Shown piece by piece: positions 5,651 through 61,270 of a stretch of 64,000 nt of DNA. Made by a program: the position numbers and the translations under genes. The notes under the pieces were generated by a model. That model saw only the letters and a list, made by a program, of their open reading frames with translations. It was not told the origin of the DNA and made no database searches. Numbering within the stretch: the first letter of the stretch is position 1; each line of letters starts with the position of its first letter. The DNA is from Neoechinorhynchus agilis (taxonomy: Eukaryota; Animalia; Acanthocephala): assembly GCA_051530055.1 (NCBI GenBank), contig CM121341.1, positions 11,634,784-11,698,783 on the forward strand, in the 5' to 3' direction.

Positions 5651-6160
5651 ATCAGTGTGGGTAAATTTGTACTAGTAGAAAGAAAAACGAACGTTTTCAA
5701 ATATTTACAAGTAGTGAAAAGTAGGATTAGACGCAATAATGGTGTTGCAATTATTCCGCATAGCCACACCATTTTAATATACTTTAAAGGAAGTATATAC
5801 TTTTGAATCAAATTTTGTGAAGTGCAGTTTCGCTCATACGTTTGAGAACTAGGTATATTTTGCTTATTATAAGGGCACACATTTTTCATAATATCTCCGC
5901 GGCTAATAAACTTTCATGCGCGCAGGATTATATGATGGTGTACTTCACTAGCAAAAGACCAATGATTTCAAATATAAACACCTTAAGAATCAGTGTGTAA
6001 ACCACATCTATTGAAGGAGAGTTTTGATCCGCACACTCCATAAAAGTCAAACCCTTTTTTAATTTTTGCTTCGTTCAAATCTCGACCAAAATGATTTGCG
6101 TACAGACCATTCCTTGATACTTCCAAAAGCTTTTGGCTCCAACAGATATAGTTGATTTAT

Positions 6161-6199
6161 TTGCCTAGCTTTCGCCGTCTTACGGCTTCAACTGGGCAA
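6161..6199 (-). ncRNA. Degenerate minimal type-I hammerhead motif downstream of a PLE endonuclease relic
   Basis: Minus strand TTGCC-CAGTTGA-A-GCCGT-AAG-ACGGC-GAA-AGCT-A-GGCAA: perfect stems I and II and palindromic stem III; core CAGTTGA differs from CTGATGA at two positions. Confidence 0.6.
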
Positions 6200-6229
6200 T
6201 CTAAAATGTGAGGCGGGGACACACAAAAA

Positions 6230-7493: not shown

Positions 7494-7574
7494 GACGAGG
7501 TGGCCGAGCGGTTAAGGCGTTAGACTGCTAATCTAATGGGTTATCCCGCGTGGGTTCGAATCCCACCCTCGTCG
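7494..7574 (+). tRNA. tRNA-Ser(GCT): tRNA-Ser (anticodon GCT), 81 nt, long variable arm
   Basis: GACGAGGTGGCCGAGCGGTTAAGGCG-TTAGA-CTGCTAA-TCTAA-TGGGTTATCCC-GCGTGGGTTCGAATCCCACCCTCGTCG; cloverleaf with A and B boxes intact. Confidence 0.97.
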
Positions 7575-10076: not shown

Positions 10077-10315
10077 GGAATTATTGTTTAGAAGTCTTCA
10101 CAGGCGGTAAATGATTATTTATTAAAGAAGTTCTGCGAACCTAATCGGGTTAATTATCAGTTCTAAAATACAAGTGGATGGATGAGTAATTATTTCGCTC
10201 TCACACGCGAGAGCGAAGATTCGAAACATCTTTAATAAATAATAATTTACCGCCTGTGAAGACTTCTTAACAATAATTCCAATAACATTCCTCTGTACCT
10301 CACATATCGACATTT
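10077..10315. mobile_element. Non-autonomous hammerhead-family insertion (inverted arm ~10077-10190, forward arm ~10220-10315)
   Basis: Inverted and forward copies of tttaataaataa..tttaccgcctgtgaagacttc..aacaataattcc; only the forward arm carries the 31-nt tail ending gtacctcacatatcgac; flanked by TTAATATCCTTT (10065-10076) and TTAATACCTTT (10316-10326). Confidence 0.8.
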
Positions 10316-10869
10316 TTAATACCTTTTTGCCCGAAACTTTCAGCGTGTCAAAGTTTGAAAAATTAATTTTATTCAAACTGAGCAAAAGAGGATAAAACAA
10401 TCATGGGGAAGACCCTTCTAAAGAAAGTAATCTAGATTATTTACAAGCAAGACTGGAGACTATTTCTTACAAAGATTTGGATACATTCGAAGAAATACAA
10501 TGATATAAGATTCAAAGTTGTGCAGAAAAAGGGACTTATTTTGTTCCCTTGGCTTGTCAGTATAATAATAACAACACGTTTATTTGTTATTTAACAAAAG
10601 TTGGACTCATGTACCTTTGGGTTCTCTGTACCTTTGGGAAGATGGAAACCCGGCTGGATACTAAATGGTAAGTAAATTTTAAGTCATATGAGAATTGTAA
10701 AAATAATAAATCGTTTAAACATAAAGCACGAAAGTCGCAACAATCCTACAGCATACCAAATGAAACACGAATTAAATATAAGGATAGAAAATGCAGCAAA
10801 GCTTCTATTGATTTAACATAACAGTTTTCAACTTTTTTTGTAGCCACGACCAAAATTTGTTTTATGGTA

Positions 10870-19079: not shown

Positions 19080-20095
19080 AGACCGAAGAACATTAACCCA
19101 CATCATCGTCTATTAAAGAAAAGGCAAAAGGGAATCAATTTGTGTGTGCCACAAACGGACTACTAAATGCGAGAAATTTCTATAAATAGTCACACAACGC
19201 AGGGGATACCCGCGGACATATGAACCCCGTACCTCGGGAATCGTGATTCAGCGTGCTCGAGCCATACAATACAAAGAAACCTTTATCGGTGACTGATGAG
19301 GCTTCCTCCCGAAATATTTCGTATCAATGAAATAGGTTTTATCTGGCTTTTTCCTCACCCAAATTCAAACTTCTCTAGAACCAATAGAGGAAAAACCTAT
19401 TAGAAAGCACAGAAAAGATACTGATTTTGTTGGTTTTTTGCATTCTCATTTTACCAATAAACTGTCATCGATAAGCTTCGTTAGAAATACTATCGAAACG
19501 TATTTATTTGATTCGCGTCCTCCATAAAATAATATCCAAATTTATACAAGAGAGGCATTACTATATAAAAGGAAACAGGAGGGAACAGACTAACCTACCC
19601 CAATGACCGATTTGGGCTATGAGTGACCTTAATCGAATTAAAAATACACGTATCATGAAGTTAGAAAGAGGCATAGGATTCTGTATAGCAGATGAGGACC
19701 ACTACCATAGGATGTCTTTTGATGTCCTATCGGGTCCCGAGTTCCGATCAAATGATGAATGCCCCACTATGAAACGAGAAAAAAATGTTGAATCAATTCT
19801 TACTAACGCTGGAGAAACGTGGAAGGATTGATTCTGAAATATACCAAAAACATCGATCCAGCAATGGAAAAATACCGAATATGTACTTAGTTTCCATTAA
19901 AAGCCCCAACAATTATTGCCTCACATTTTGCATATAATACCAGATCATCTAGAACATTGGCTCACATGTTACGAAATTCAATGCCGAAGGACAAGCACAC
20001 CGTATAATCGAGTGTAGAGTTCCTGGGAGACCGAAGGCACACAGCAATACATAATATAAAATGATTTCTGCTGATGTCAAGTCTCTATTCACAAA
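19080..20095 (+). mobile_element. Penelope-like element A, 5' half (pLTR with hammerhead, RT N-terminal part), broken at the SLFTN motif
   Basis: IMKLERGIGFCIADEDHY (DKG-like region) and KMISADVKSLFTN (PLE RT motif); hammerhead core at 19293. Confidence 0.8.
19287..19322 (+). ncRNA. Minimal type-I hammerhead motif in PLE-A pLTR
   Basis: GTGA-CTGATGA-GG-CTTCCTC-CC-GAA-ATAT-T-TCGT: all core nucleotides intact, palindromic stem III, weak 2-bp stem II. Confidence 0.6.
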
Positions 20096-25756: not shown

Positions 25757-25950
25757 GGAAGGGTTATTTAGATCTTGTTAAAAACATTTAGAACCTCGCC
25801 GAATTTATCTGCATTTATAAAATTGATGGTTGTGATACCAAACGATGAGGATTTTTTGCAAAGCTGAGATGAAACCCCTTCTGACGAGGTTCTAAATGTC
25901 TTTAATCAACTTTTTTACTAGGATGAGGACCTAAATAAAACTTCTAATAT
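25757..25950. mobile_element. Degenerate hammerhead-family copy immediately left of the satellite
   Basis: Forward gatgaaacc..gaggttctaaatgtctttaat..gatgaggacctaaataaaacttctaat, plus an inverted ttaaaaacatttagaacctcg arm at ~25757-25805. Confidence 0.6.
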
Positions 25951-26124
25951 TGATGGGTTTGAAAATCTCTAATTTACAAAAGAAAATAATTTGGGTTTTT
26001 GTATTTAACTGAGCTCAAATTCCCAAAAAAAGACGTTTATTCGAATCTAAAAATCTTAAACGTCTAAAATGTCCATATGTGAGAGAAGTGCTATTTATGC
26101 CATTGCCCTCAAAGACGCTTGTCT

Positions 26125-29100
26125 TTTAAGAACTAACAACTGATAATGAACCTGAAGAAGTTCTAAACGTCTTTAATAAAAGATTCTTTACCCAAATGAA
26201 GAATTAAATAAAATTTCTAATCTTATACCTCGGTACCTCTTCACTTACCGACCTTCATTTTATATAACTCTTTTTATTCATCATCCATTTTTTGATTTAA
26301 GAACTAATAAACTGATAATGAACCTGAAGAAGTTCTAAACGTCTTTAATAAAAGATTCTTTACCCAAATGAAGAATTAAATAAAATTTCTAATCTTATAC
26401 CTCGGTTCACTTACCGACTTCACTCTTTTTATTCATCATCCATTTTTTGATTTAAGAACTAACAAACTGATAATGAACCTGAAGAAGTTCATTTTATATA
26501 AAAATGATTCTTTTTATTAATAAACTGATAAAATCATCCACCTTTTTTACCGATTTTTTAATAACTCTTTTTATTCATCAAATTTAAGAACTAATAAACT
26601 GATAATGAACCTGAAGAAGTTCTAAACGTCTTTAATAAAAGATTCTTTACCCAAATGAAGAATTAAATAAAATTTCTAATCTTATACCTCGGTACCTCTT
26701 CACTTACCGACCTTCATTTTATATAACTCTTTTTATTCATCATCCATTTTTTGATTTAAGAACTAATAAACTGATAATGAACCTGAAGAAGTTCTAAACG
26801 TCTTTAAAAAAAGATTCTTTACCCAAATGAAGAATTAAATAAAATTTCTAATCTTATACCTCGGTACCACTTCACTTACCGACCTTCATTTTATATAACT
26901 CTTTTTATTCATCATCCATTTTTTGATTTAAGAACTAATAAACTGATAATGAACCTGAAGAAGTTCTAAACGTCTTTAATAAAAGATTCTTTACCCAAAT
27001 GAAGAATTAAATAAAATTTCTAATCTTATACCTCGGTACCTCTTCACTTACCGACCTTCATTTTATATAACTCTTTTTATTCATCATCCATTTTTTGATT
27101 TAAGAACTAATAAACTGATAATGAACCTGAATCTTTAAAAAAAGATTCTTTAACCAAATGAAGAATTAAATAAAATTTCTAATCTTATACCTCGGTACCT
27201 CTTCACTTACCGACCTTCATTTTATATAACTCTTTTTATTCATCATCCATTTTTTGATTTAAGAACTAATAAACTGATAATGAACCTGAAGAAGTTCTAA
27301 ACGTCTTTAATAAAAGATTCTTTACCCAAATGAAGAATTAAATAAAATTTCTAATCTTATACCTCGGTACCTCTTCACTTACCGACCTTCATTTTATATA
27401 ACTCTTTTTATTCATCATCCATTTTTTGATTTAAGAACTAACCTGATAATGAACCTGAAGAAGTTCTAAACGTCTTCAATAAAAGATTCTTTACCCAAAT
27501 GAAGAATTAAATAAAATTTCTAATCTTATTCCTCGGTACCTCTTCACTTACCGACCTTCATTTTATATAACTCTTTTTATTCATCATCCATTTTTTGATT
27601 TAAGAACTAATAAACTGATAATGAACCTGAAGAAGTTCTAAACGTCTTTCAATAAAAGATTCTTTACCCAAATGAAGAATTAAATAAAATTTCTAATCTT
27701 ATACCTCGGTACCTCTTCACTTACCGACCTTCATTTTATATAACTCTTTTTATTCATCATCCATTTTTTGATTTAAGAACTAATAAACTGATAATGAACC
27801 TGAAGAAGTTCTAAACGTCTTTAAAAAAAAGATTCTTTACCCAAATGAAGAATTAAATAAAATTTCTAATCTTATTCCTCGGTACCTCTTCACTTACCGA
27901 CCTTCATTTTATATAACTCTTTTTATTCATCATCCATTTTTTGATTTAAGAACTAATAAACTGATAATGAACCTGAAGAAGTTCTAAACGTCTTTAATAA
28001 AAGATTCTTTACCCAAATGAAGAATTAAATAAAATTTCTAATCTTATTCCTCGGTACCTCTTCACTTACCGACCTTCATTTTATATAACTCTTTTTATTC
28101 ATCATCCATTTTTTGATTTAAGAACTAATAAACTGATAATGAACCTGAAGAAGTTCTAAACGTCTTTAATAAAAGATTCTTTACCCAAATGAAGAATTAA
28201 ATAAAATTTCTAATCTTATACCTCGGTACCTCTTCACTTACCGACCTTCATTTTATATAACTCTTTTTATTCATCATCCATTTTTTGATTTAAGAACTAA
28301 TAAACTGATAATGAACCTGAAGAAGTTCTAAACGTCTTTAATAAAAGATTCTTTACCCAAATGAAGAATTAAATAAAATTTCTAATCTTATACCTCGGTA
28401 CCTCTTCACTTACCGACCTTCATTTTATATAACTCTTTTTATTCATCATCCATTTTTTGATTTAAGAACTAATAAACTGATAATGAACCTGAAGAAGTTC
28501 TAAACGTCTTTCAATAAAAAGATTCTTTACCCAAATGAAGAATTAAATAAAATTTCTAATCTTATACCTCGGTACCTCTTCACTTACCGACCTTCATTTT
28601 ATATAACTCTTTTTATTCATCATCCATTTTTTGATTTAAGAACTAATAAACTGATAATGAACCTGAAGAAGTTCTAAACGTTTTAATAAACTGAAATGAA
28701 GATTCTTTTTAATAAAAGATTCCCAAATGAAGAATTAAATAAAATTTCTAATCTTATTCCTCGGTACCTCTTCACTTACCGACCTTCATTTTATATAACT
28801 CTTTTTATTCATCATCCATTTTTTGATTTAAGAACTAATAAACTGATAATGAACCTGAAGAAGTTCTAAATACCTCGTCTTTCATTTTAATAAAATCATC
28901 CATTTTTTGATTCTTTACCCAAATGAAGAATTAAATAAAATTTCTAATCTTATACCTCGGTACCTCTTCACTTACCGACCTTCATTTTATATAACTCTTT
29001 TTATTCATCATCCATTTTTTGATTTAAGAACTAATAAACTGATAATGAACCTGAAGAAGTTCTAAACGTCTTTAATAAAAGATTCTTTACCCAAATGAAG

Positions 29101-32100
29101 AATTAAATAAAATTTCTAATCTTATTCCTCGGTACCTCTTCACTTACCGACCTTCATTTTATATAACTTTTTTATTCATCATCCATTTTTTGATTTAAGA
29201 ACTAATAAACTGATAATGAACCTGAAGAAGTTCTAAACGTTTTAATAAAAGATTCTTTACCCAAATGAAGAATTAAATAAAATTTCTAATCTTATACCTC
29301 GGTACCTCTTCACTTACCGACCTTCATTTTATATAACTCTTTTTATTCATCATCCATTTTTTGATTTAAGAACTAATAAACTGATAATGAACCTGAAGAA
29401 GTTCTAAACGTCTTTAATAAAAGATTCTTTACCCAAATGAAGAATTAAATAAAATTTCTAATCTTATACCTCGGTACCTCTTCACTTACCGACCTTCATT
29501 TTATATAACTCTTTTTATTCATCATCCATTTTTTGATTTAAGAACTAATAAACTGATAATGAACCTGAAGAAGTTCTAAACGTCTTTAAAAAAGATTCTT
29601 TACCCAAATGAAGAATTAAATAAAATTTCTAATCTTATACCTCGGTACCTCTTCACTTACCGACCTTCATTTTATATAACTCTTTTTATTCATCATCCAT
29701 TTTTTGATTTAAGAACTAATAAACTGATAATGAACCTGAAGAAGTTCTAAACGTCTTTAATAAAAGATTCTTTACCCAAATGAAGAATTAAATAAAATTT
29801 CTAATCTTATACCTCGGTACCTCTTCACTTACCGACCTTCATTTTATATAACTCTTTTTATTCATCATCCATTTTTTGATTTAAGAACTAATAAACTGAT
29901 AATGAACCTGAAGAAGTTCTAAACGTCTTTAATAAAAGATTCTTTACCCAAATGAAGAATTAAATAAAATTTCTAATCTTATACCTCGGTACCTCTTCAC
30001 TTACCGACCTTCATTTTATATAAACTCTTTTTATTCATCATCCATTTTTTGATTTAAGAACTAATAAACTGATAATGAACCTGAAGAAGTTCTAAACGTC
30101 TTTAATAAAAGATTCTTTACCCAAATGAAGAATTAAATAAAATTTCTAATCTTATTCCTCGGTACCTCTTCACTTACCGACCTTCATTTTATATAACTCT
30201 TTTTATTCATCATCCATTTTTTGATTTAAGAACTAATAAACTGATAATGAACCTGAAGAAGTTCTAAACGTCTTTAATAAAAGATTCTTTACCCAAATGA
30301 AGAATTAAATAAAATTTCTAATCTTATACCTCGGTACCTCTTCACTTACCGACCTTCATTTTATATAACTCTTTTTATTCATCATCCATTTTTTGATTTA
30401 AGAACTAATAAACTGATAATGAACCTGAAGAAGTTCTAAACGTCTTTCAATAAAAGATTCTTTACCCAAATGAAGAATTAAATAAAATTTCTAATCTTAT
30501 ACCTCGGTACCTCTTCACTTACCGACCTTCATTTTATATAACTCTTTTTATTCATCATCCATTTTTTGATTTAAGAACTAATAAACTGATAATGAACCTG
30601 AAGAAGTTCTAAACGTCTTTAATAAAAGATTCTTTACCCAAATGAAGAATTAAATAAAATTTCTAATCTTATACCTCGGTACCTCTTCACTTACCGACCT
30701 TCATTTTATATAACTCTTTTTATTCATCATCCATTTTTTGATTTAAGAACTAATAAACTGATAATGAACCTGAAGAAGTTCTAAACGTCTTTAATAAAAG
30801 ATTCTTTACCCAAATGAAGAATTAAATAAAATTTCTAATCTTATACCTCGGTACCTCTTCACTTACCGACCTTCATTTTATATAACTCTTTTTATTCATC
30901 ATCCATTTTTTGATTTAAGAACTAATAAACTGATAATGAACCTGAAGAAGTTCTAAACGTCTTCAATAAAAGATTCTTTACCCAAATGAAGAATTAAATA
31001 AAATTTCTAATCTTATACCTCGGTACCTCTTCACTTACCGACCTTCATTTTATATAACTCTTTTTATTCATCATCCATTTTTTGATTTAAGAACTAATAA
31101 ACTGATAATGAACCTGAAGAAGTTCTAAACGTCTTTAATAAAAGATTCTTTACCCAAATGAAGAATTAAATAAAATTTCTAATCTTATTCCTCGGTACCT
31201 CTTCACTTACCGACCTTCATTTTATATAACTCTTTTTATTCATCATCCATTTTTTGATTTAAGAACTAATAAACTGATAATGAACCTGAAGAAGTTCTAA
31301 ACGCTTTAATAAAAGATTCTTTACCCAAATGAAGAATTAAATAAAATTTCTAATCTTATTCCTCGGTACCTCTTCACTTACCGACCTTCATTTTATATAA
31401 CTCTTTTTATTCATCATCCATTTTTTGATTTAAGAACTAATAAACTGATAATGAACCTGAAGAAGTTCTAAACGTCTTTAATAAAAGATTCTTTACCCAA
31501 ATGAAGAATTAAATAAAATTTCTAATCTTATACCTCGGTACCACTTCACTTACCGACCTTCATTTTATATAACTCTTTTTATTCATCATCCATTTTTTGA
31601 TTTAAGAACTAATAAACTGATAATGAACCTGAAGAAGTTCTAAACGTCTTTAATAAAAGATTCTTTACCCAAATGAAGAATTAAATAAAATTTCTAATCT
31701 TATTCCTCGGTACCTCTTCACTTACCGACCTTCATTTTATATAACTCTTTTTATTCATCATCCATTTTTTGATTTAAGAACTAATAAACTGATAATGAAC
31801 CTGAAGAAGTTCTAAACGTCTTTAATAAAAGATTCTTTACCCAAATGAAGAATTAAATAAAATTTCTAATCTTATACCTCGGTACCTCTTCACTTACCGA
31901 CCTTCATTTTATATAACTCTTTTTATTCATCATCCATTTTTTGATTTAAGAACTAATAAACTGATAATGAACCTGAAGAAGTTCTAAACGTCTTTAATAA
32001 AAGATTCTTTACCCAAATGAAGAATTAAATAAAATTTCTAATCTTATTCCTCGGTACCTCTTCACTTACCGACCTTCATTTTATATAACTCTTTTTATTC

Positions 32101-35100
32101 ATCATCCATTTTTTGATTTAAGAACTAATAAACTGATAATGAACCTGAAGAAGTTCTAAACGTCTTTAAAAAGATTCTTTACCCAAATGAAGAATTAAAT
32201 AAAATTTCTAATCTTATACCTCGGTACCTCTTCACTTACCGACCTTCATTTTATATAACTCTTTTTATTCATCATCCATTTTTTGATTTAAGAACTAATA
32301 AACTGATAATGAACCTGAAGAAGTTCTAAACGTCTTTAATAAAAGATTCTTTACCCAAATGAAGAACTAAATAAAATTTCTAATCTTATACCTCGGTACC
32401 ACTTCACTTACCGACCTTCATTTTATATAACTCTTTTTATTCATCATCCATTTTTTGATTTAAGAACTAACAAACTGATAATGAACCTGAAGAAGTTCTA
32501 AACGTCTTTCAAAAAAAGATTCTTTACCCAAATGAAGAACTAAATAAAATTTCTAATCTTATACCTCGGTACCACTTCACTTACCGACCTTCATTTTATA
32601 TATGATAATGAACCTGAAGAAGTTCTAAACGTCTTAAATAAAAGATTCTTTACCCAAATGAAGAATTAAATAAAATTTCTAATCTTATACCTCGGTACCA
32701 CTTCACTTACCGACCTTCATTTTATATAACTCTTTTTATTCATCATCCATTTTTTGATTTAAGAACTAACAAACTGATAATGAACCTGAAGAAGTTCTAA
32801 ACGTCTTCAATAAAAGATTCTTTACCCAAATGAAGAATTAAATAAAATTTCTAATCTTATACCTCGGTACCTCTTCACATACCGACCTTCATTTTATATA
32901 ACTCTTTTTATTCATCATCCATTTTTTTGATTTAAGAACTAATAAACTGATAATGAACTCGAAGAAGTTCTAAACGTCTTTAATAAAAGATTCTTTACCC
33001 AAATGAAGAATTAAATAAAATTTCTAATCTTATACCTCGGTACCTCTTCACTTACCGACCTTCATTTTATATAACTCTTTTTATTCATCATCCATTTTTT
33101 AATTTAAGAACTAATAAACTGATAATGAACCTGAAGAAGTTCTAAACGTCTTTAATAAAAGATTCTTTACCCAAATGAAGAATTAAATAAAATTTCTAAT
33201 CTTATTTCTCGGTACCTCTTCACTTACCGACCTTCATTTTATATAACTCTTTTTATTCATCATCCATTTTTTGAATTAAGAACTAATAAACTGATAATGA
33301 ACCTGAAGAAGTTCTAAACGTCTTCAATAAAAGATTCTTTACCCAAATGAAGAATAAAATAAAATTTCTAATATTATACCTCGGTACCTCTTCACATACC
33401 GACCTTCATTTTATATAACTCTTTTTATTCATCATCCATTTTTTGATTTAAGAACTAATAAACTGATATTGAACCTGAAGAAGTTCTAAACGTCTTTAAT
33501 AAAAGATTCTTTACCCAATTGAAGAGTTAAATAAAATTTCTAATCTTATTCCTCGGTACCACTTCACTTACCGACCTTCATTTTATATAACTCTTTTTAT
33601 TCATCATCCATTTTTTGATTTAAGAACTTATAAACTGATAATGAACCTGAAGAAGTTCTAAACGCCTTTAATAAAAGATTCTTTACCCAAATGAAGAATT
33701 AAATAAAATTTCTAATCTTATACCTCGGTACCACTTCACTTACCGACCTTCATTTTATATAACTCTTTTTATTCATCATCCATTTTTTGATTTAAGAACT
33801 AATAAACTGATAATGAACCTGAAGAAGTTCTAAACGCCTTTAATAAAAGATTCTTTACCCAAATGAAGAATTAAATAAAAATTCTAAATCTTATACCTCG
33901 GTACCTCTTCACTTACCGACCTTCATTTTATATAACTCTTTTTATTCATCATCCATTTTTTAATTTAAGAACTAATAAACTGATAATGAACCTGAAGAAG
34001 TTCTAAACGTCTTTCAAAAAAAGATTCTTTACCCAAATGAAGAACTAAATAAAATTTCTAATCTTATACTTCGGTACCTCTTCACTTACCGACCTTCATT
34101 TTATATAACTCTTTTTATTCATCATCCATTTTTTGATTTAAGAACTAACAAACTGATAATGAACCTGAAGAAGTTCTAAACGTCTTTCAAAAAAAGATTC
34201 TTTACCCAAATGAAGAACTAAATAAAATTTCTCTAATCCTATTCCTCGGTACCTCTTCACTTACCGACCTTCATTTTATATAACTCTTTTTATTCATCAT
34301 CCATTTTTTGATTTAAGAACTAATAAACTGATAATGAACCTGAAGAAGTACTAAACGTCTTTAATAAAAGATTCTTTACCCAAATGAAGAATTAAATAAA
34401 ATTTCTAATCTTATTCCTCGGTACCTCTTCACTTACCGACCTTCATTTTATATAACTCTTTTTATTCATCATCCATTTTTTGATTTAAGAACTAATAAAC
34501 TGATAATGAACCTGAAGAAGTTCTAAACGTCTTTAATAAAAGATTCTTTACCCAAATGAAGAATTAAATAAAATTTCTAATCTTAATCCTCGGTACCTCT
34601 TCACTTACCGACCTTCATTTTATATAACTCTTTTTATTCATCATCCATTTTTTGATTTAAGAACTAATAAACTGATAATGAACCTGAAGAAGTTCTAAAC
34701 GTCTTTAATAAAAGATTCTTTACCCAAATGAAGAATTAAATAAAATTTCTAATCTTATACCTCGGTACCTCTTCACTTACCGACCTTCATTTTATATAAC
34801 TCTTTTTATTCATCATCCATTTTTTGATTTAAGAACTAACAAACTGATAATGAACCTGAAGAAGTTCTAAACGTCTTCAATAAAAGATTCTTTACCCAAA
34901 TGAAGAATTAAATAAAATTTCTAATCTTATACCTCGGTACCACTTCACTTACCGACCTTCATTTTATATAACTCTTTTTATTCATCATCCATTTTTTGAT
35001 TTAAGAACTAATAAACTGATAATGAACCTGAAGAAGTTCTAAACGTCTTTAATAAAAGATTCTTTACCCAAATGAAGAATTAAATAAAATTTATAATCTT

Positions 35101-37034
35101 ATTCCTCGGTACCTCTTCACTTACCGACCTTCATTTTATATAACTCTTTTTATTCATCATCCATTTTTTGATTTAAGAACTAATAAACTGATAATGAACC
35201 TGAAGAAGTTCTAAACGTCTTTAATAAAAGATTCTTTACCCAAATGAAGAATTAAATAAAATTTCTAATTTTATACCTCGTTACCTCTTCACTTACCGAC
35301 CTTCATTTTATATAACTCTTTTTATTCATCATCCATTTTTTAATTTAAGAATTAACAAACTGATAATCAACCTGAAGAAGTTCTAAACGTCTTTAATAAA
35401 AGATTCTTTACCCAAATGAAGAATTAAATAAAATTTCTAATCTTATACCTCGGTACCTCTTCACTTACCGACCTTCATTTTATATAACTCTTTTTATTCA
35501 TCATCCATTTTTTAATTTAAGAACTAATAAATTGATAATGAACCTGAAGAAGTTCTAAACGTCTTTAATAAAAGATTCTTTACCCAAATGAAGAATTAAA
35601 TAAAATTTCTAATCCTATTCCTCGGTACCTCTTCACTTACCGACCTTCATTTTATATAACTCTTTTTATTCATCATCCATTTTTTGATTTAAGAACTAAT
35701 AAACTGATAATGAACCTGAAGAAGTTCTAAACGTCTTAAATAAAAGATTCTTTACCCAAATGAAGAATTAAATAAAATTTCTAATCTTATACCTCGGTAC
35801 CTCTTCACATACCGACCTTCATTTTATATAACTCTTTTTATTCATCATCCATTTTTTGATTTAAGAACTAATAAACTGATATTGAACCTGAAGAAGTTCT
35901 AAACGTCATTAATAAAAGATTCTTTACCCAATTGAAGAGTTAAATAAAATTTCTAATCTTATTCCTCGGTACCACTTCACTTACCGACCTTCATTTTATA
36001 TAACTTTTTATTCATCATCCATTTTTTGATTTAAGAACTAATAAACTGATAATGAACCTGAAGAAGTTCTAAACGCCTTTAATAAAAGATTCTTTACCCA
36101 AATGAAGAATTAAATAAAATTTCTAATCTTATACCTCGGTACCACTTCACTTACCGACCTTCATTTTGTATAACTCTTTTTATTCATCATCCATTTTTTG
36201 ATTTAAGAACTAATAAACTGATAATGAACCTGAAGAAGTTCTAAACGTCTTTCAAAAAAAGATTCTTTACCCAAATGAAGAATTAAATAAAATTTCTAAT
36301 CTTATACCTCGGTACCTCTTCACTTACCGACCTTCATTTTATATAACTCTTTTTATTCATCATCCATTTTTTAATTTAAGAACTAAAAAACTGATAATGA
36401 ACCTGAAGAAGTTCTAAACGTCTTTCAAAAAAAGATTCTTTACCCAAATGAAGAACTAAATAAAATTTCTAATCTTATACCTCGGTACCTCTTCACTTAC
36501 CGACCTTCATTTTATATAACTCTTTTTATTCATCATCCATTTTTTGATTTAAGAACTAACAAACTGATAATGAACCTGAAGAAGTTCTAAACGTCTTTCA
36601 AAAAAAGATTCTTTACCCAAATGAAGAACTAAATAAAATTTCTAATCCTATTCCTCGGTACCTCTTCACTTACCGACCTTCATTTTATATAACTCTTTTT
36701 ATTCATCATCCATTTTTTGATTTAAGAACTAATAAACTGATAATGAACCTGAAGAAGTTCTAAACGTCTTTAATAAAAGATTCTTTACCCAAATGAAGAA
36801 CTAAATAAAATTTCTAATCTTATACCTCGGTACCACTTCACTTACCGACCTTCATTTTATATAACTCTTTTTATTCATCATCCATTTTTTGATTTAAGAA
36901 CTAACAAACTGATAATGAACCTGAAGAAGTTCTAAACGTCTTTCAAAAAAAGATTCTTTACCCAAATGAAGAACTAAATAAAATTTCTAATCCTATTCCT
37001 CGGTACCTCTTCACTTACCGACCTTCATTTTATA
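26125..37034 (+). repeat. Tandem satellite array, 172-bp monomer, ~63 copies, ~27% GC
   Basis: CTGATAATGAACC recurs at 27961, 28133 and 28305 (period 172); homogeneous centre, more variants at the right end; a few garbled monomers near 26400-26600 and 28680-28920. Confidence 0.99.
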
Positions 37035-39790: not shown

Positions 39791-40147
39791 TAATAATGTC
39801 TTAAACCTTTTATTCGTTTGCCAAGAAGCTGACGGACAGCGTTGCCCTCCTCTGATTCCTTTTCAGATAACCAAAGAAAAGCTTCCTGACCAAGGCGCAA
39901 GGCGTCGAAAATTTGAAGCAAGAAATAAATAAAACACCCATTTTCCGTTCGATAATAAATCTGGAATAAAACATGAGGGTGTTGGGAAAAGAGGCTTTCC
40001 ATAATTTTTTGTCAAAAGTTAAAGTATGCAATCAACTGAATTTAATTTTAGGAAAGCATTAAAAATTAATTTAATTGCGACCTTCGATTTGTTAGGTATC
40101 ATTAAGTTTATAACACTTGCGATACTAGAATTTCAATTTTTATTTTC

Positions 40148-47529: not shown

Positions 47530-47656
47530 TTTTAGTTGTTTTTTTGGCGGAGAAATTAAAATGATTTTATTTTAAAATCCGATATTTCGGCACAATCTTG
47601 TGCCTCTAAAATAAAATCATTTTAATTTCTCCGCCAGAAAATAACCAATATGAACA
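47530..47656. mobile_element. MITE, internally deleted copy of the 17904-18128 family, opposite orientation
   Basis: ggcggagaaattaaaatgattttatttta..taaaataaaatcattttaatttctccgcc perfect inverted arms; flank agaaaataaccaatatgaaca matches the reverse complement of the left end of copy 1. Confidence 0.7.
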
Positions 47657-50082
47657 ATTCATTCTTCAAACACATCTCTTTTTGGGGGTGCGATTGTTTA
47701 GTTGCGATATGAATCTCAGATCCTCCTCATTACATCGACATTCCTCGCTAAATGGAGACAATTTGACATGTCGATATTTTTTATGTGATGAATGATGCGT
47801 CTGATCCCAAGGTATCCGCAGGAGCTTGTCCTTTCTGTCAAAGAAATATGCGTTTGACGAAATCAAATGTTTTACACGTCCATGGTCCTTGCTCTTCACG
47901 AAATGCAGGCTCTGGAGAGCTTCCAATGAATGCCGCCTATCTTAATTCAAAATCGGAGCAAAACGACGATTCGCAGAGTGAGGAGTCTGATTACCGATTT
48001 CCTTCGCGTTCTCTCAAAATACGTCCTCAAACGAATTCTTAAAGGAGCTCGGTATCAAATCGGGACGAGCTACGCCGAACTCCGCAATGAATGTGTTGCC
48101 AATAATAACGCAATGTCATGGATGCGCTTGTTCGCTTTTCCAAAGTTAGTCCTCTATTCCAGAGTCCTCAAAGGAATCGTTGACCTCCATCGTCAAGAAA
48201 ATAGTCGTTCAATTCCAAGAGAAATTCAGTGATGCCCCAAAACTCTCGGAGGCAACTACATTGGATTTTTCGGAAGCTCAAGATAATCGACATCCAACCT
48301 GCCAATGAGGTGTGCGCGCGTCAGCAAAACTATCCCGCGGAGACGTTAGAGGAGATGTAAGACTACTTTCATCAACTGACACATTCGTCAGCGACACATC
48401 CGTAACATTTGATGCTTTACGAGAAAAACATCCGCCGTCAGACGCAAGGCTCTTCATCCAGGCCAATGAGCTCGCTTCTGGAAATAATTCTTTGAGACCC
48501 ATCGAAAGAGCTGATATTGAGAAAGCTCTATTCTCCTTCGCATGTGGCTCCAGTCACGGACTAGACGGTCTCATGCCCCAACACTTAAAGGATCGTGTCT
48601 CACCTGCGTCAAACTGCGCCTCCAAATCAGTCATTAAAGCCCTGACAGCCGTAGTCAATTTAATCGCTCGATGCGGTTTAATCATGGAAAGCGTGCGCTT
48701 CCTTTTCTCGGCCTCGCTTTGTGTTCTAAATAAGGAGGACGGTGGGATTCGTCCCATTGCTATCGGCACCACCTTTCGCCGCCTTACGGGCAAGATCCTT
48801 TCCAAAAGAATAGCAGAAGAAGCGAGTCACATTCCATTGCCAGTACAACTCGGATGCTGCTCACCTTGTGTAGCCGAGGTGATTGTGCATGCGTTGCGTA
48901 CCTTTGTTAATACTGGCAAGGATATTCAAATCGTGCTCAAATGCGACTTCGCCAACGCCTTCAATACTATTGACGTGGAGCCTTGATTCAAGCAGTCCGT
49001 AGTAATCTCCCGGAGGTATTACCCTACTTCCCTTCAGCCTATAGTTCTAGTACTCCCCTTGTCTTCGGAAATGATCTTATTTGGTCACAATCCGGTTTCC
49101 AACAGGGAGATCCTTTGGGACCTCTGGGTTTCGCCTTGACAATCAACCATCTGACACTCTCTTTCCAGTCCAATTTCAACGCCTGGTACATGGACGATGC
49201 CACACTCGGAGGCTCTCCTTCCGTAGTCCTGCGCGATCTCAGTATATTGGTTTTCGAAGCAAATAAGGTTGGCTTGACTTAGAATCCTCGAAAATGTGAG
49301 TTACTGGTTTTGAATTGTGGAGATAACGACTGTTGGCATATTTCGAGTGATTTTGAAAAGGTTGCTCCAGGCATACAGCTCATAACGAAATCTGGTATGC
49401 GTCTACTTGGCAGTTGTGTAATTGATGAGAACATACCTGACGATTTAAATGAGATCAGACCCTCAATAGAGCTCATGTGTAACCGACTATCGGAATTATC
49501 CCCTCACGAAGCTTTACATCTCCTTAAGAACTGCCTATACATACCGAAACTACTCTATGAATTATGATCAGCACCCTTTTTCAAATATGCGGACTGCTAA
49601 AAAAAGTTTGACAACATTCTCAGAACATCATTATCTGAGATAATTAACGTGCAGCTCCCGGAATCAGGTTGGACACAGGCATTCATGCCCATTAATTTTG
49701 GAGGAATTGGTATTCCCGTCCTTCCTTTCCCCCTATGGTCAGCCGAATGCTCAAATTGGTATTTTAAGAGTCCGAATTTTGTTCAAATAAGATATTTGCT
49801 TCAATGTTATAATAGTCACAGTCAATTAATGTCAACGGAAAGTTATCGAGAGGATTCAAATTTGCAACTGCAGTGGATCAGTGGAGCAGACTCTTTCGAA
49901 CAAAACAGAGGTTCCCGAGCACCCGGAAAGACAGCGGTCGTGGGATATTCCATTGGCTGAGCGAGTTCACAACTCACTTGAAGATTCGCTCTCCATGGTG
50001 GATAGAATACGATTAAATGCAGCATCCTGCGAAGAACCCGGTACATGGTTGACCGCCCTCCCAGTCGCTTCGCTCAGAACTC

Positions 50083-50900
50083 CATCATATGTGAACGTGG
50101 GGAAAAAATTATATATCCAAGATGACTTTTATTGAAATATTTCGTCCAATCGCACTGGACTTCTTCAGTCAATTATCTAAAAAGGGAATTGGAAACATCA
50201 TTTTCTTGTCAGGAGGTATCCTCAACTTTAGGGAATAATCTGTCTTGCTTCCCTCGAAAGTATTGGCTCCCTGAATGTATATGGCCTCGATAATAACACG
50301 CTCAACCTTGTGGTCATTGCGTACCAACACATATGTGTCGTTTATATCGATCTTATGGCCCGTATTCAGAAAATGGGAAACCACAGCGGAGTTCGTGTTA
50401 TGTTTGTTCAGTGAATAGCGATGTTCCCTCATCCTCCCAAAGTTATTTGTCTGGCCAATATAGTAGCGATCACAATCCGAGCAAAGTATTCTATATTCTG
50501 CACCACTTGGGCCAAATCCAAGATAAAAACCAGTTCATGTTCGAGGTCAGTACTCGAGCTGCGATAAGCAAAAGCTCGTTGTACCAATGATCTAATCCTG
50601 GAGATCTTATATTCACGTGGTTGAGAGGAGATCCATGGTACCATGCCATGTGGAATATCAATTTTCCGATAAGCCTTAGTCCTATATCCATCTCAACCAA
50701 CACGCTCTATCGCAACATCAAGGTAACTGAATTTACCGTCAGTCTCGATATCCGTCGACCATTGAATGTGTGAATCTTTGATTCCAGGAATTGTGGGTAG
50801 GTACTTCTCTTCCCACTGCCGCATGTATAACTCAGCAAGTACCGGTGCAAGAGGGCTGCCCATCGCTACACCATTCACCTGATCAAAATCCCGTGCCGAC
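50083..50900 (-). mobile_element. 5'-truncated Penelope-like element nested in the CRE element
   Basis: NGVAMGSPLAPVLAELYM, FSYLDV, REHRY..SAVVSH..GH..ERVIIEAIYI; hammerhead directly after the stop codon. Confidence 0.9.
50131..50173 (-). ncRNA. Apparently intact minimal type-I hammerhead ribozyme (PLE 3' pLTR)
   Basis: ATTGA-CTGAAGA-A-GTCCA-GTGCGAT-TGGAC-GAA-ATAT-T-TCAAT: 5-bp stems I and II, complete core, palindromic stem III. Confidence 0.85.
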
Positions 50901-56279: not shown

Positions 56280-57445
56280 CATGGAAAAGTATGAACAGTG
56301 CAAATTCTTCACGGCCGACGTAACGTCCTTATTTACCAACATTCCACTCCAAGAGACAATTTCCATAGCAGCTTAACTTCTACACAATCAATGCGAAGAA
56401 CCGCGCCTTGATCATAAAACGTGGATAACTCTACTGCAGTGGTGCACATGCAAGACCGTTTTTGAATTCGATCAAGTTTTCTATGAACAACGCGACGGAG
56501 TTGCAATGGGTTCACCTCTGGTACCCACTCTAGCTGATCTCTACATGAGAAGATGGGAAAACAACTTCTTGAAGAAGCAACCCAACATCAAAAAGTGACT
56601 CACTGATGATGAAACGAGCATGGGAGACCTAAGCATTCCACTCAACATGGAGGATCCAAACATCCAGTGGTCAATGACTCAGGAAGATGAAGAGGGGGCT
56701 ATCTCCTTTTTGGACGTAAAGATAAAACGATGATAAGGGCAACATCAAAAAACAGCTCTACCGCAAACCAGGTATAGCATGGGGTCCACCTCACTGGTCG
56801 AGCCACCAACCGGAGGGCCAGGATGATTTCTTCAGAAAGCAGGGATTGGGAAGAACAAAAACAAAGTATCACCAAAGTTCTCAGATCACGAGGCTTCCCT
56901 GAATATGCCATCAAAATCAGTCTGAAAAAGGCAACACATAGCGGCCATCGCAAGAAGAAGGATACCGCAAGCATTTCGCTCAAATACACTGGCTTTAACC
57001 ACATAAGTGACAACGCGACCGAAAAACTGAGGCGCCTCAACTACCTCGCTCCAAATCTTTTGATCTACAACAAACGGGCGCATCCATTGCGGGCAATCTC
57101 AAGAGGAAAACCAAGCAAGAGACAAAATCAGGGATATACAAAATCTCATGTGCAGAATGCCCAAAGGTCTACATTGGACAAACCATGCAAGGGATCAGGA
57201 AACGGATTTCGCAGCATAAACAAGCTTGCAGGACATTCGACAAATCCTCAGCAATCTCGAACCACCAGCAAACAATCCAGCACAAGGTGGATTTTGAAAA
57301 GGCGAGATTCATAACCAGCGAACCGGATCTTAGAAGAAGACTGATTCTTGAGGCCATTCACATCCGGGGAAATCCGACGATGGGAGGCAATAAATCAAAC
57401 CACACGCTGGTGCTACCCAAGTTGCGTAGCATGACGGGCAAATAA
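56280..57445 (+). mobile_element. Penelope-like element (RT core to GIY-YIG), decayed
   Basis: ADVTSLFTNIP, GVAMGSPL, ISFLDVKI, GIYKISCAECPKVYIGQT..RISQHK, RRLILEAIHI. Confidence 0.92.
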
Positions 57446-57779
57446 ATCGGCAACAAACCGCAAGAGGTGTGTACGGATGCAACTCCCCACACTTCGAGTA
57501 TTAGTAAACCTGCGGATCTGAGCTACATCCAGACGTGACCGGCTGTGCATGCTGTCTATGTCCTCCATTTTAGATAGACTGAAGAGGCAAGGAAAACCTT
57601 GCGAAATATTTCTAAAATAAATGAGTAACGAAAACACCGGGGAAAGGATTCGCCAACGCATTTAATTTTATGGATAGCCGCTTCCGCATATAATTGTGAT
57701 TTTGTCGTCAATGGCCCAAATATTGATCCTCCTCTAAGGATTCGCTTCGGAACAATTGCGAAATCGTCATTCAACTTCT

Positions 57780-59270: not shown

Positions 59271-60335
59271 AATTTCCACCTCATCTAACTAGTGACGTTC
59301 ATGAATGGATTATTGAGAATCCTACTGTCCCTGCCTGCAGCCTAGCGAAATCAAAGCCAAGGGAACGGGCTTGGAGAGTAACAGCGGCGAAAAAAGATAT
59401 TGTTGAGCTTGACTCTAGTCAGTCTCTGTGAAATAACATGATAGGCGTAGAATAGATGGGGGCCCGCCGCGGTGAAATACCACTACCATCATTGTTTCTT
59501 ATTTACTCAGTGATTCAGTTAGCGTTAATTCGCTAATTGCGATATCTATTCCTTTCTTAAGTGTCGAAGAGTGTCTGGTCTGAGAACACAGACTGATTGG
59601 GAGTTTGGAATTATTGTTTAGGTCTTCACCCGGTAAGTTATTGTTTTGCTAAGGACGTTTCGAACCTCGTGGGTTCATCATCTGTTTGTTAGCTAGTAAT
59701 AAACGATGAACCCGACGAGGGTTTGCTAGTTAGTAATAGACGATGAACCTAATGAGGGTTTGTTAGTTAGTAATAGACCATGAACCCGACGAGGTTAATA
59801 ACACGTTTTTTTAATTAACAAAGAGATGGACAAATGTATCTTTGGGTCCTCTAACTTTGGGTCAACGTCTTTAATAAAAAATCATTTACCAGGTGAAGAC
59901 CTAAAGAGTAATTCCTATCATATACCCCGGTACCTCACATATCGACTATTGGGAGTTTGATTAGGGCGGTACATCTGTTAAAACCTAACGCAGTCAGAAA
60001 AATTATCACGGGGATAACTGGGTTGTGGCGGCCAAGCGTCCACAGCGACGTCGCTTTTTGATCCTTCGATGTCGGCTTTTCCTATCATTGGGATGCAAAA
60101 AGTCCCATAGCGTTGGATTGTTCACCCATTAATAGGGAACGTGAGCTGGGTTTAGACCGCCGCGAAACAGGTTAGTTATACCCTACTGTTGAGCTGGTTG
60201 TTGTAATAGCAATCTTGCTAATTAAGAAAAGAACCGCAGGTTTGGACATTAAGTACACGCACTCGGTCGAGAGGCCGATGTTGCGAAGCTTCGTCAGCAG
60301 GATTACGACTGAACACCTCTAAGTCGGAAGTCTAC
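59271..60335 (+). pseudogene. 28S rRNA (pseudo): 28S rRNA pseudogene fragment starting near the R2 target site
   Basis: tcatctaactagtgacg, ctagcgaaa..gccaagggaacgggcttgg, gtgaaataccactac, gggagtttg, gatccttcgatgtcggct, ggattgttcaccca..gtgagctgggtttagacc; contains a 340-bp insertion and an internal deletion at gcag|tcagaa (~59995). Confidence 0.93.
59608..59947. mobile_element. Hammerhead-family insertion inside the 28S fragment
   Basis: Exact 12-bp TSD ATTGGGAGTTTG (59596-59607, 59948-59959); inverted arm with hammerhead-like core (59654-59684, minus strand); three 37-bp subrepeats; forward arm plus 33-nt tail ending cacatatcgact. Confidence 0.9.
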
Positions 60336-61219: not shown

Positions 61220-61270
61220 ACCTAAACAATAATTCTAATCAAATTCCCCGGTACCTTACATATCGACATT
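61220..61270 (+). mobile_element. 51-bp 5'-truncated hammerhead-family insertion
   Basis: acctaaacaataattc..ccccggtaccttacatatcgacatt between exact 12-bp repeats GTTATATCACCT (61208-61219, 61271-61282). Confidence 0.85.

What the first reader, a model, noticed from the sequence alone, without database searches (positions are those of the whole stretch)
26125..37034. 172-bp satellite is a tandemly amplified hammerhead ribozyme with a mutated core (retrozyme-to-satellite transition)
Seen: the monomers carry TAAA-CTGATAA-T-GAAC-CTGAAGAA-GTTC-TAA-ACGT-C-TTTA. This folds as a minimal type-I hammerhead: stem I TAAA/TTTA, stem II GAAC/GTTC, palindromic ACGT stem III, and an extra base after A9 like the other hammerheads in this window. 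It has G8->A and G12->U, and the monomer contains no GAAA. The rest of the monomer aligns to the dispersed TSD-flanked copies at 10077, 25757, 59608 and 61220 (tttaataaa..tttacc..tgaaga..taaa..cggtacctc..cac.ta.cgac). Known: PLE-associated minimal hammerheads and 150-400-nt tandem non-LTR retrozymes occur in animals, G12 is the general base, and G8 pairs with C3. Inference: a mobile ribozyme unit lost its activity and was amplified into a nucleosome-sized satellite, possibly with a structural or centromeric role.
Basis: partly seen in the sequence, partly recalled or inferred. Interest (0 to 1): 0.88.

Follow-up and report, generated by a model that had tools for sequence, protein, structure and literature searches.

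The report
Satellite built from dead hammerhead retroelement
An 11-kb tandem array of 172-bp units in the thorny-headed worm Neoechinorhynchus agilis derives from the ribozyme-bearing 3' end of a Penelope-like retrotransposon, with the ribozyme now a mutated relic; this is a further example of a known route from mobile element to satellite DNA.

Summary
Window 26125-37034 is about 63 head-to-tail copies of a 172-bp unit (27% GC). All 62 monomers carry TAAA-CTGATAA-T-GAAC-CTGAAGAA-GTTC-TAA-ACGT-C-TTTA.

This is the minimal type-I hammerhead (HHR) layout of Penelope-like elements (PLEs), with G8->A and G12->U. Chance is unlikely: 3 of 20,000 shuffled monomers fit my descriptor.

The same layout with an intact core follows two decayed PLE reading frames in the window. 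The rest of the unit is homologous to dispersed copies (E 8e-12 to 1.6e-4). Three dispersed copies in the window carry a PLE-type 3' tail, and two of them have exact 12-bp target-site duplications.

In another locus of the same genome, the satellite's best match follows a GIY-YIG remnant and has an intact core (CTGATGA...GAA-ACGT-C).

So the hammerhead ancestry is supported. The source is a PLE 3' terminus. No monomer keeps G8 or G12, and the hammerhead fold is disfavoured (-1.3 against -4.2 kcal/mol). Within the array the motif is no better conserved than its neighbours.

A circular-RNA (retrozyme) stage and a centromeric role are untested. This is a new member of a known kind and of modest interest.

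The parts
26125..26583 (+). Three rearranged or deleted leading monomers (171, 155 and 132 bp) at the left edge of the array. No target-site duplication at the array ends.
26584..32459 (+). Young, homogeneous half of the array. Most units have 0-1 mismatch to the 172-bp consensus and many are identical.
32460..37034 (+). Older half of the array, with 2-7 mismatches per unit. It ends 13 nt after a tail (...CCGAC CTTCATTTTATA).
26595..26634 (+). Hammerhead-like relic of a representative monomer: TAAA|CTGATAA|T|GAAC-CTGAAGAA-GTTC|TAA|ACGT|C|TTTA (G8->A, G12->U).
26635..26679 (+). 'Arm' of the representative monomer (ATAAAAGATTCTTTACCC..AAATGAAGAATTAAATAAAATTTC). It is homologous to the 3' arm of the dispersed elements and to L043:15125-15165.
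26680..26711 (+). PLE-type 'tail' inside each monomer (TCTTATACCTCGGTACCTCTTCACTTACCGAC). It is homologous to the terminal ..CCCCGGTACCTCACATATCGAC of the dispersed copies.
26712..26755 (+). Remaining 44 nt of the monomer, possibly a collapsed inverted half. TTCATCATCC is the reverse complement of a GATGA box. The homology is not significant.
10077..10311 (+). Dispersed relative: a 235-nt hairpin element (-97.9 kcal/mol, z = -12.8) with hammerhead-like modules next to each arm, a 31-nt tail and an imperfect ~13-bp target-site duplication.
25757..25951 (+). Dispersed relative about 175 bp upstream of the array. Hairpin; both arms carry TAA (G12->U). No tail and no target-site duplication.
59607..59946 (+). 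Dispersed relative inserted in a 28S rRNA fragment with an exact 12-bp target-site duplication ATTGGGAGTTTG (59596-59607 and 59948-59959). The inverted arm read on the minus strand is CAGATGA|T|GAACC-CACGA-GGTTC|GAA|ACGT|C, one change (U4->A) from a canonical core.
61220..61267 (+). 5'-truncated relative (last 16 nt of the arm plus the tail) with an exact 12-bp target-site duplication GTTATATCACCT.
57575..57614 (+). Intact minimal hammerhead (TAGA|CTGAAGA|G|GCAAGG-AAAA-CCTTGC|GAA|ATAT|T|TCTA) downstream of a decayed PLE copy (RT plus GIY-YIG, ~56290-57450).
50132..50172 (-). Intact minimal hammerhead directly after the stop codon of a decayed PLE (RT C-terminus plus GIY-YIG, minus strand ~50169-50900).
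39882..39918 (+). Minimal hammerhead with G8->C (CTTC|CTGACCA|A|GGCGC-AAG-GCGTC|GAA|AATT|T|GAAG).
6162..6198 (-). Minimal hammerhead with two core changes (TGCC|CAGTTGA|A|GCCGT-AAG-ACGGC|GAA|AGCT|A|GGCA).

Best explanation
The 172-bp unit is a shortened copy of a non-autonomous element descended from the 3' terminus of a Penelope-like retrotransposon (PLE) of Neoechinorhynchus agilis.

**Ancestral module.** It read: TTTTAGA box, minimal type-I hammerhead (CUGAUGA, N, stem II, GAA, ACGU palindrome, C17), AATAAA, a ~45-nt arm, then a ~32-nt 'tail'.

**Dispersal.** Relatives of this module are scattered as single insertions made by PLE-type target-primed reverse transcription. Shown: 12-bp target-site duplications, 5' truncation, an inverted arm, and a tail at one end only.

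**Array formation.** At this locus one unit became tandem and was expanded in place. The hammerhead already carried G8->A and G12->U, because every monomer has both. Inferred: expansion was by unequal exchange or local segmental duplication, since the left half is nearly identical copies and the right half is older.

**Present state.** The hammerhead is a fossil. The general base G12 and the C3-pairing G8 are gone, helices I and II are 4-bp A/U-rich stems, and the fold is not preferred. The array most likely has no ribozyme function and behaves as an ordinary interstitial satellite.
For: **Array and motif**
- Array and fixed motif.
- Descriptor match: 3 of 20,000 shuffled monomers; 4 sites in the non-array window against 0.017 expected.

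**Intact hammerheads nearby**
- Intact hammerheads of the same layout lie directly 3' of PLE RT/GIY-YIG remnants at 50132-50172(-) and 57575-57614(+).
- More occur in other loci of the same assembly (L042, L044).
- They fold as hammerheads at minimum free energy.

**Homology**
- To the dispersed copies: E 8e-12 to 1.6e-4.
- To L043:15087-15183: 72% over 98 nt, E = 3e-12.
- That L043 segment lies about 65 nt after a GIY-YIG remnant (FIGQASRNFKTRLAEHTR) and reads CTGATGA|T|..|GAA|ACGT|C.
- The majority consensus of 10 family members restores TGATGA..GGTTC-GAA-ACGT-C.

**PLE insertion signatures**
- Target-site duplications, truncation and tail.
- These match published PLE signatures (PMC8557442, PMC11167929).

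**No constraint on the relic**
- Variability of the motif inside the array is 0.015 per site, against 0.010 for the arm and 0.020 for the tail.
- The hammerhead-type fold is -1.3 kcal/mol against a minimum free energy of -4.2; the stem II pair has probability 0.12.

**History of the array**
- Age gradient along the array. No higher-order repeat.

**Literature**
- Roles of G12 and G8: PMC6155905.
- Single C3 or G8 mutations abolish cleavage of a PLE hammerhead but not insertion: PMC11167929.
Against: - No family member in the ~150 kb I could read combines an intact core with good helices. The L043 copy has an intact core but almost no stem I and a weak stem II.
- BLAST finds no significant similarity between the satellite and the two PLE 3' ends inside the window. 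Tail similarity to PLE1 and to the L043 PLE is marginal (p about 0.04).
- The link to an autonomous PLE therefore rests on one decayed locus.
- The array has no target-site duplication and ends 13 nt past the tail, so how it started is not shown.
- The origin of monomer positions 129-172 is unproven.
- Cleavage activity was not measured.
Confidence: 0.75

Rival explanations
1. The array was inserted ready-made. A multimeric or circular RNA of the element was reverse transcribed by a PLE enzyme in rolling-circle fashion into tandem cDNA (the retrozyme life cycle). Later unequal exchange only modified it. The identity of the element is the same as in the best explanation; only the way the array arose differs.
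For: PLEs and non-LTR retrozymes characteristically insert as tandems (PMC8557442, PMC7229834, PMC11167929). The tail lies inside each unit, as expected if reverse transcription starts at internal sites of a tandem template. Relatives are rod-like RNAs. The left half of the array is nearly identical copies.
Against: There is no target-site duplication at the array ends. The hammerhead needed to make unit-length circles is mutated in every unit. The monomer itself is not rod-like. The two halves of different age and the decayed left edge fit growth in place.
Confidence: 0.2
2. The array is a working retrozyme locus. Its transcripts still self-process, through a tolerant dimeric hammerhead or a host factor, into 172-nt circular RNAs.
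For: The tandem layout, unit size, low GC and palindromic ACGU helix III that could pair between neighbouring units fit non-LTR retrozymes (PMC7229834, PMC4209133).
Against: G12 (general base) and G8 are both replaced, and C3 is not co-varied (PMC6155905, PMC11167929). The hammerhead fold is disfavoured. The motif shows no extra conservation. The monomer is not highly self-paired.
Confidence: 0.05
3. The satellite has been taken over for a chromosomal role (centromere or heterochromatin), and its nucleosome-sized unit is what matters.
For: Only the unit length (172 bp), the AT-richness and the position at about 60% of a 19.4-Mb chromosome.
Against: The array is only 10.9 kb and lies between ordinary genes and transposon fragments. 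No other array was seen in about 84 kb of other loci. There are no data on abundance, chromatin or location.
Confidence: 0.05
4. The hammerhead resemblance is coincidence in an AT-rich repeat.
For: Rfam finds no hammerhead in the array, even in a 400-nt search at E<=10. The core has two mismatches. Stems I and II are only 4 bp.
Against: Rfam also misses the intact PLE hammerheads, so it cannot see this class. Only 3 of 20,000 shuffles match the descriptor. Homologous copies carry the missing G8 and G12 at the same aligned positions.
Confidence: 0.03

Closest known systems
Non-LTR retrozymes: tandem 150-450-bp repeats with type-I hammerheads (newt satellite 2, Dolichopoda pDo500, coral, mussel and axolotl repeats; PMC7229834). 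They were recently argued to be non-autonomous PLE derivatives (bioRxiv 10.64898/2026.07.22.740005).
   Same: Head-to-tail units of 172 bp, low GC, a type-I hammerhead layout with a short palindromic helix III, co-occurrence with PLEs, and sequence relationship to a PLE terminus.
   Different: The catalytic core is mutated in every unit. The monomer is not rod-like. No RNA evidence is available. The unit contains a PLE 'tail', and its relatives occur as single target-site-duplication-flanked hairpin insertions.
Minimal hammerheads in the pseudo-LTRs of metazoan Penelope-like elements (PMC4209133, PMC8557442).
   Same: A 4-5-bp helix I, an unpaired nucleotide 5' of helix II, a small palindromic helix III implying action as dimers, occasional pairs on opposite strands, and a position at the PLE terminus.
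   Different: Here the motif sits in a 172-bp satellite without any reading frame, and it has G8->A and G12->U.
Schistosoma Sm-alpha and W-element repeats: SINE-like or satellite-like elements with hammerheads (PMC8490949, PMC6155905).
   Same: Short non-coding hammerhead-bearing repeats in a parasitic worm that exist both dispersed and in tandem.
   Different: The Schistosoma hammerheads are canonical and active, and there is no sequence relationship. My knowledge of Sm-alpha activity comes from the literature, not from a test here.
Satellites born from transposable-element fragments, such as MITE- or SINE-derived satellites (general model discussed in bioRxiv 10.64898/2026.07.22.740005).
   Same: A transposon-derived unit becomes tandem and expands by unequal exchange, and the original transposon function decays.
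   Different: The donor is a PLE terminus, and the decayed function is a ribozyme.

Membership tests
Hammerhead ribozyme (type I, minimal PLE type) | Conserved core C3-U4-G5-A6-N7-G8-A9 ... G12-A13-A14 | tested here: not met
   All 62 monomers have A8 and U12, and none has CTGATGA.
Hammerhead ribozyme (type I, minimal PLE type) | Three-way layout: helix I open, helix II hairpin, unpaired nucleotide 5' of helix II, short palindromic helix III, H17 | tested here: met
   The descriptor matches the consensus (stem I 4 bp, stem II 4 bp, ACGT, C17). 3 of 20,000 shuffles match.
Hammerhead ribozyme (type I, minimal PLE type) | The hammerhead secondary structure is a favoured fold of the RNA | tested here: not met
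   -1.3 kcal/mol against a minimum free energy of -4.2; stem II pair probability 0.12 and stem I 0.02. The PLE1 and PLE2 controls fold as hammerheads.
Hammerhead ribozyme (type I, minimal PLE type) | Match to the Rfam hammerhead covariance models | tested here: inconclusive
   No match. The intact PLE hammerheads are also missed, even in a 111-nt search.
Hammerhead ribozyme (type I, minimal PLE type) | Site-specific self-cleavage | not testable with these tools
   Needs in vitro transcription of monomer and dimer.
Non-LTR retrozyme | Tandem repeats of about 150-450 bp with low GC | tested here: met
   172 bp, 63 units, 27% GC.
Non-LTR retrozyme | A competent type-I hammerhead in each unit | tested here: not met
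   Core mutated in every unit.
Non-LTR retrozyme | Highly self-paired (rod-like) unit RNA | tested here: not met
   Monomer -21 kcal/mol, z = -1.7. The dispersed relative at 10077 is rod-like, z = -12.8.
Non-LTR retrozyme | Expressed as unit-length linear and circular RNA | not testable with these tools
   No RNA data could be reached.
PLE-derived non-autonomous element | Sequence homology to the terminus of an element encoding a PLE RT or GIY-YIG | tested here: met
   Satellite positions 14-111 against L043:15087-15183, E = 3e-12. This lies about 65 nt downstream of a GIY-YIG remnant. It rests on a single decayed locus.
PLE-derived non-autonomous element | 30-40-bp 'tail' at one end of insertions | tested here: met
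   A ~31-nt ..CCCCGGTACCTCACATATCGAC is present only at the 3' end of the 10077, 59608, 61220 and L043:5985 copies, and is absent from the 25757 copy.
PLE-derived non-autonomous element | Target-site duplication, 5' truncation and inverted 5' copy | tested here: met
   Exact 12-bp duplications at two copies; a truncated copy at 61220; inverted arms at 10077, 25757 and 59608. The array itself has no target-site duplication.
Centromeric or structural satellite | Very long arrays at a defined chromosomal domain bound by centromeric chromatin | not testable with these tools
   All that is known is that this array is 10.9 kb and flanked by genes and transposons.

The most novel reading that the evidence does not exclude
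The N. agilis family directly ties retrozyme-like repeats to the PLE insertion machinery. One lineage exists in three forms: the 3' end of a PLE, rod-like target-site-duplication-flanked single insertions that end at the PLE 'tail', and a tandem array with the tail inside each unit. Arrays like this one would be, or would have been, the multimeric templates from which PLE reverse transcriptase starts at two internal sites. Mobility would have continued after the hammerhead was inactivated, so the ribozyme is dispensable in vivo.
Probability: 0.3. Interest if true: 0.5.

Novelty: new member of a known kind. Interest (0 to 1): 0.32.

Why it matters
The finding gives a worked invertebrate (acanthocephalan) example of a proposal so far supported mainly in vertebrates. 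That proposal is that hammerhead-bearing tandem repeats descend from Penelope-like element termini and can decay into plain satellites.

The family also contains mobile copies with broken ribozyme cores. This agrees with in vitro evidence that PLE insertion does not need hammerhead cleavage.

There is a practical lesson as well. Rfam models miss this minimal hammerhead class entirely, so descriptor-based scans are needed.

Tried and rejected
- **Rfam.** I ran it at gathering thresholds and at E<=10 on the whole window, on two monomers and on a bona fide PLE hammerhead. It found no hammerhead anywhere, so the result is uninformative.
- **Metagenome scan.** A scan for the 17-nt tail motif gave 39 hits with no further similarity, so these are chance matches.
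- **Protein search with the decayed PLE1.** Nothing at E<=1e-10.
- **Kinase search.** It returned one paralogue from this genome, on an unplaced scaffold (L044), so it could not be used to sample the genome widely.
- **BLAST of the window's PLE 3' ends.** No significant hit against the satellite or the dispersed copies.
- **Monomer positions 129-172 as a collapsed inverted arm.** Not significant; only TTCATCATCC.. against the 59608 copy reached p about 0.05.
- **Tail similarity to PLE1 and the L043 PLE.** Marginal, p about 0.04.
- **Covariance model from the intact hammerheads.** Abandoned because MAFFT placed the stem II gaps inconsistently. I used my own descriptor with shuffles instead.
- **Alternative register.** Using the intact CTGAAGA box in loop II as the core was rejected because no stem II or GAA follows it.
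- **Higher-order repeat.** None found.
- **Literature.** Papers on N. agilis and on acanthocephalan satellites mention neither this repeat nor PLEs.
Full report
**1. The observation**

Tandem Repeats Finder reports a 172-bp period over 26582-37034 with 96% matches. Three rearranged units extend the array back to 26125. The array is 10,910 bp, about 63 units. GC falls to 27% and GC skew is strongly negative.

All 62 anchored monomers carry CTGATAA (three have one further change) and TAA. None has G8 or G12. CTGATGA is absent from the array, and GAAA is absent from the consensus.

**2. Where the window comes from**

An intronless kinase gene places the window on chromosome CM121341.1 (19.4 Mb) of assembly GCA_051530055.1. 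Fragments of Penelope-like element (PLE) protein from the window hit proteins named Neoechinorhynchus agilis. These lie on other chromosomes of the same assembly.

The host is therefore an acanthocephalan fish parasite. Its genome paper (PMC12690905) describes a hybrid ONT/Illumina/Hi-C assembly and does not mention satellites or PLEs.

**3. Is the hammerhead resemblance real?**

Rfam finds no hammerhead in the window, even at E<=10. Rfam also misses motifs that are clearly hammerheads, so that negative result says nothing.

Two such motifs lie at PLE 3' ends:
- 57575-57614(+) reads TAGA|CTGAAGA|G|GCAAGG-AAAA-CCTTGC|GAA|ATAT|T|TCTA.
- 50132-50172(-) reads TTGA|CTGAAGA|A|GTCCA..TGGAC|GAA|ATAT|T|TCAA.
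- Both lie just 3' of decayed PLE reading frames with RT motifs and a GIY-YIG domain.
- Both fold into the hammerhead secondary structure at minimum free energy.
- A 111-nt Rfam search around the first still finds nothing.

Their layout is a short helix I, an unpaired base 5' of helix II, and a 4-nt palindromic helix III. This is what Cervera and de la Pena described for metazoan PLE minimal hammerheads (PMC4209133).

I wrote that layout as a descriptor allowing up to two core mismatches.
- It finds 4 sites in the 53 kb outside the array, against 0.017 expected. These are the two above plus 39882-39918 (G8->C) and 6162-6198 (two changes).
- It finds the satellite motif.
- It matches only 3 of 20,000 shuffled monomers.

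The PLE hammerheads also share a TTTTAGA(T) box upstream and AATAAA downstream. The satellite keeps both, as TTTAAGA and AATAAAAG.

**4. Homology to mobile elements**

A dimer of the consensus matches four places outside the array:

| Window match | E-value |
|---|---|
| 59864-59946 | 8e-12 |
| 10215-10328 | 4e-10 |
| 25881-25951 | 4e-10 |
| 61223-61288 | 1.6e-4 |

It also matches the opposite arms of the same elements on the other strand.

The elements at 10077-10311 and 59607-59946 are hairpins. The first folds at -97.9 kcal/mol, z = -12.8. They end in a ~31-nt tail..CCCCGGTACCTCACATATCGAC, which is present at one end only. The 59608 and 61220 copies have exact 12-bp target-site duplications. 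The 61220 copy is a 48-nt 5'-truncated end. The 10077 duplication is imperfect. The 25757 copy has neither a tail nor a duplication.

These features are the published signature of PLE insertions: 5' truncation, an inverted 5' copy, and an optional 30-40-bp tail that reflects two internal start sites of reverse transcription (PMC8557442; PMC11167929).

**5. The link to an autonomous-type PLE and to an intact core**

I fetched four further loci of the same genome, about 84 kb in all. The satellite's best match there is L043:15087-15183, at 72% over 98 nt with E = 3e-12.

That segment lies about 65 nt downstream of a GIY-YIG remnant (..FIGQASRNFKTRLAEHTR..). It reads GGAA|CTGATGA|T|GAAACC-GAAGA-GGTAC|GAA|ACGT|C|CGTAATAAAAT, followed by the arm and a diverged tail. 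The core, the ACGU palindrome and C17 are all intact. Helices I and II are eroded.

The inverted arm of the 59608 copy is one change (U4->A) from a canonical core and has a good 5-bp helix II. A MAFFT alignment of ten family members gives the majority consensus ..TGATGA-T-.AA.CC-GA.GA-GGTTC-GAA-ACGT-C-TTTAATAAAA...

The family ancestor therefore had a canonical hammerhead, and the satellite's A8 and U12 are derived states.

U12 is shared with both arms of the neighbouring 25757 copy. A8 is shared with the inverted arm of the 10077 copy. Relatives carry the same broken positions, and the 10077 copy, which has a tail and an imperfect duplication, was clearly inserted. In vitro, hammerhead catalytic mutants do not affect PLE insertion (PMC11167929).

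**6. State of the relic**

- G12 is the general base, and G8 supplies the general-acid 2'-OH (PMC6155905).
- G8 also pairs with C3. Single C3 or G8 mutations abolish cleavage of a PLE hammerhead (PMC11167929).
- In the satellite both are replaced, and C3 is not co-varied.
- The hammerhead-type fold scores -1.3 kcal/mol, against -4.2 for an alternative fold. Pair probabilities are 0.12 for stem II and 0.02 for stem I.
- Within the array the motif varies at 0.015 per site, against 0.010 for the arm and 0.020 for the tail.
- The changes that do occur, such as TTTA to TTCA or TTTC, break helix I.

I infer that the motif is a fossil. Activity itself was not measured.

**7. How the array arose**

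Each unit holds the box, the hammerhead relic, the arm and the tail, plus 44 nt of uncertain origin. That last stretch contains TTCATCATCC, the reverse complement of a GATGA box. It may be a collapsed inverted half, but the similarity is not significant. The monomer is not rod-like.

The array has no target-site duplication, and it ends 13 nt beyond a tail. Units in 26584-32459 are almost all within one mismatch of the consensus. Units in 32460-37034 carry 2-7 mismatches. The left edge is rearranged. There is no higher-order periodicity.

I read this as growth in place by unequal exchange or local duplication, with a recent burst in the left half. Insertion of a ready-made tandem cDNA from a multimeric or circular template is not excluded, and I list it as a rival.

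**8. Comparison with what is known**

Hammerhead-bearing tandem repeats have been known since newt satellite 2. They are now called non-LTR retrozymes (PMC7229834). A 2026 preprint argues from vertebrate data that they are non-autonomous derivatives of PLE pseudo-LTRs and discusses satellite birth from them.

This locus fits that picture and extends it to an acanthocephalan. It fails the retrozyme criteria of a competent hammerhead and a rod-like unit, and RNA evidence could not be obtained. I therefore file it as a PLE-derived satellite with a dead hammerhead: a new member of a known kind.

Nothing supports a centromeric role. The array is small and lies among ordinary genes (kinase, fucosyltransferase, LRR protein, UCH) and transposon debris.

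**9. Limits**

- I could read only about 150 kb of the genome.
- Copy number, other arrays, expression and the existence of a fully intact family member are unknown.
- The link to an autonomous PLE rests on one decayed locus.
- The descriptor was written after I had seen the intact hammerheads in the window.

Noticed in passing
window 57700-60570: A 28S rRNA 3' fragment (Rfam LSU positions ~2359-3399) starts at about 59280, inside the classical R-element insertion hotspot (CTCATCTAACTAGTGACG..CATGAATGG). It is preceded by a decayed non-LTR reverse-transcriptase remnant (ORF 57790-58197). It looks like an rDNA-specific LINE with its 28S flank, lying outside the rDNA.
   Followed up: partly
window 59684-59794: A 37-bp unit repeated three times inside the 59608 element. 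Each copy is the 5' half of the hammerhead-like module (..TAATAGAC-GATGAACC-CGACGA-GGGTT..).
   Followed up: partly
window 26614-26625 (each monomer): Loop II of the satellite motif holds an intact CTGAAGA-A-GTTC box identical to the 5' core half of the PLE1 and PLE2 hammerheads. No stem II or GAA follows it. Homologous positions in relatives read CTGACGA, CCGACGA and CCGAAGA. Unexplained; it may be a relic of a half-motif duplication.
   Followed up: partly
window 50132-50190 (-), 57562-57625 (+), 39850-39935 (+), 6150-6210 (-): Every PLE minimal hammerhead has a TTTTAGAT-like box upstream and AATAAA just downstream. In PLE1 the ORF stop codon TGA forms part of helix I.
   Followed up: partly
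window 19286-19326 (+): A motif with an intact core (CTGATGA..GAA-ATAT-T) but no credible helix II, probably a decayed PLE hammerhead. No PLE reading frame was seen upstream.
   Followed up: partly
window 10569-10638; window 59796-59861; L043 12468-12527 (-): A ~65-nt segment (AATAACACGTTT..CTTTGGGT) is shared by the interior of the 59608 element, a site 260 bp downstream of the 10077 element, and a site next to a truncated PLE in L043 (E 3e-9 and 3e-6).
   Followed up: no
window 47531-47649: A long, near-perfect palindrome matches several microRNA precursor models on both strands, well below their gathering scores. It is probably an inverted-repeat element and not a microRNA.
   Followed up: no
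window 47785-50135 (+): A frameshifted LINE-like reverse transcriptase (weak RVT_1 hits) abuts the 3' end of the minus-strand PLE1.
   Followed up: partly
L042 9110 (-) and 11144 (+): Two identical PLE2-type hammerheads in inverted orientation about 2 kb apart, the inverted-copy arrangement described for PLE insertions. L041:11132 has the same hammerhead with G8->A.
   Followed up: no
window 7494-7574 (+): A tRNA gene with a long variable arm. The anticodon loop reads CUGCUAA, which I read as Ser(GCU).
   Followed up: no
window 25960-26122: The spacer between the 25757 element and the array contains AAGACGTTTA...TTAAACGTCTAAAAT. This small inverted pair resembles the ACGTC end of the hammerhead module, so the array may sit in a cluster of older family insertions.
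   Followed up: no
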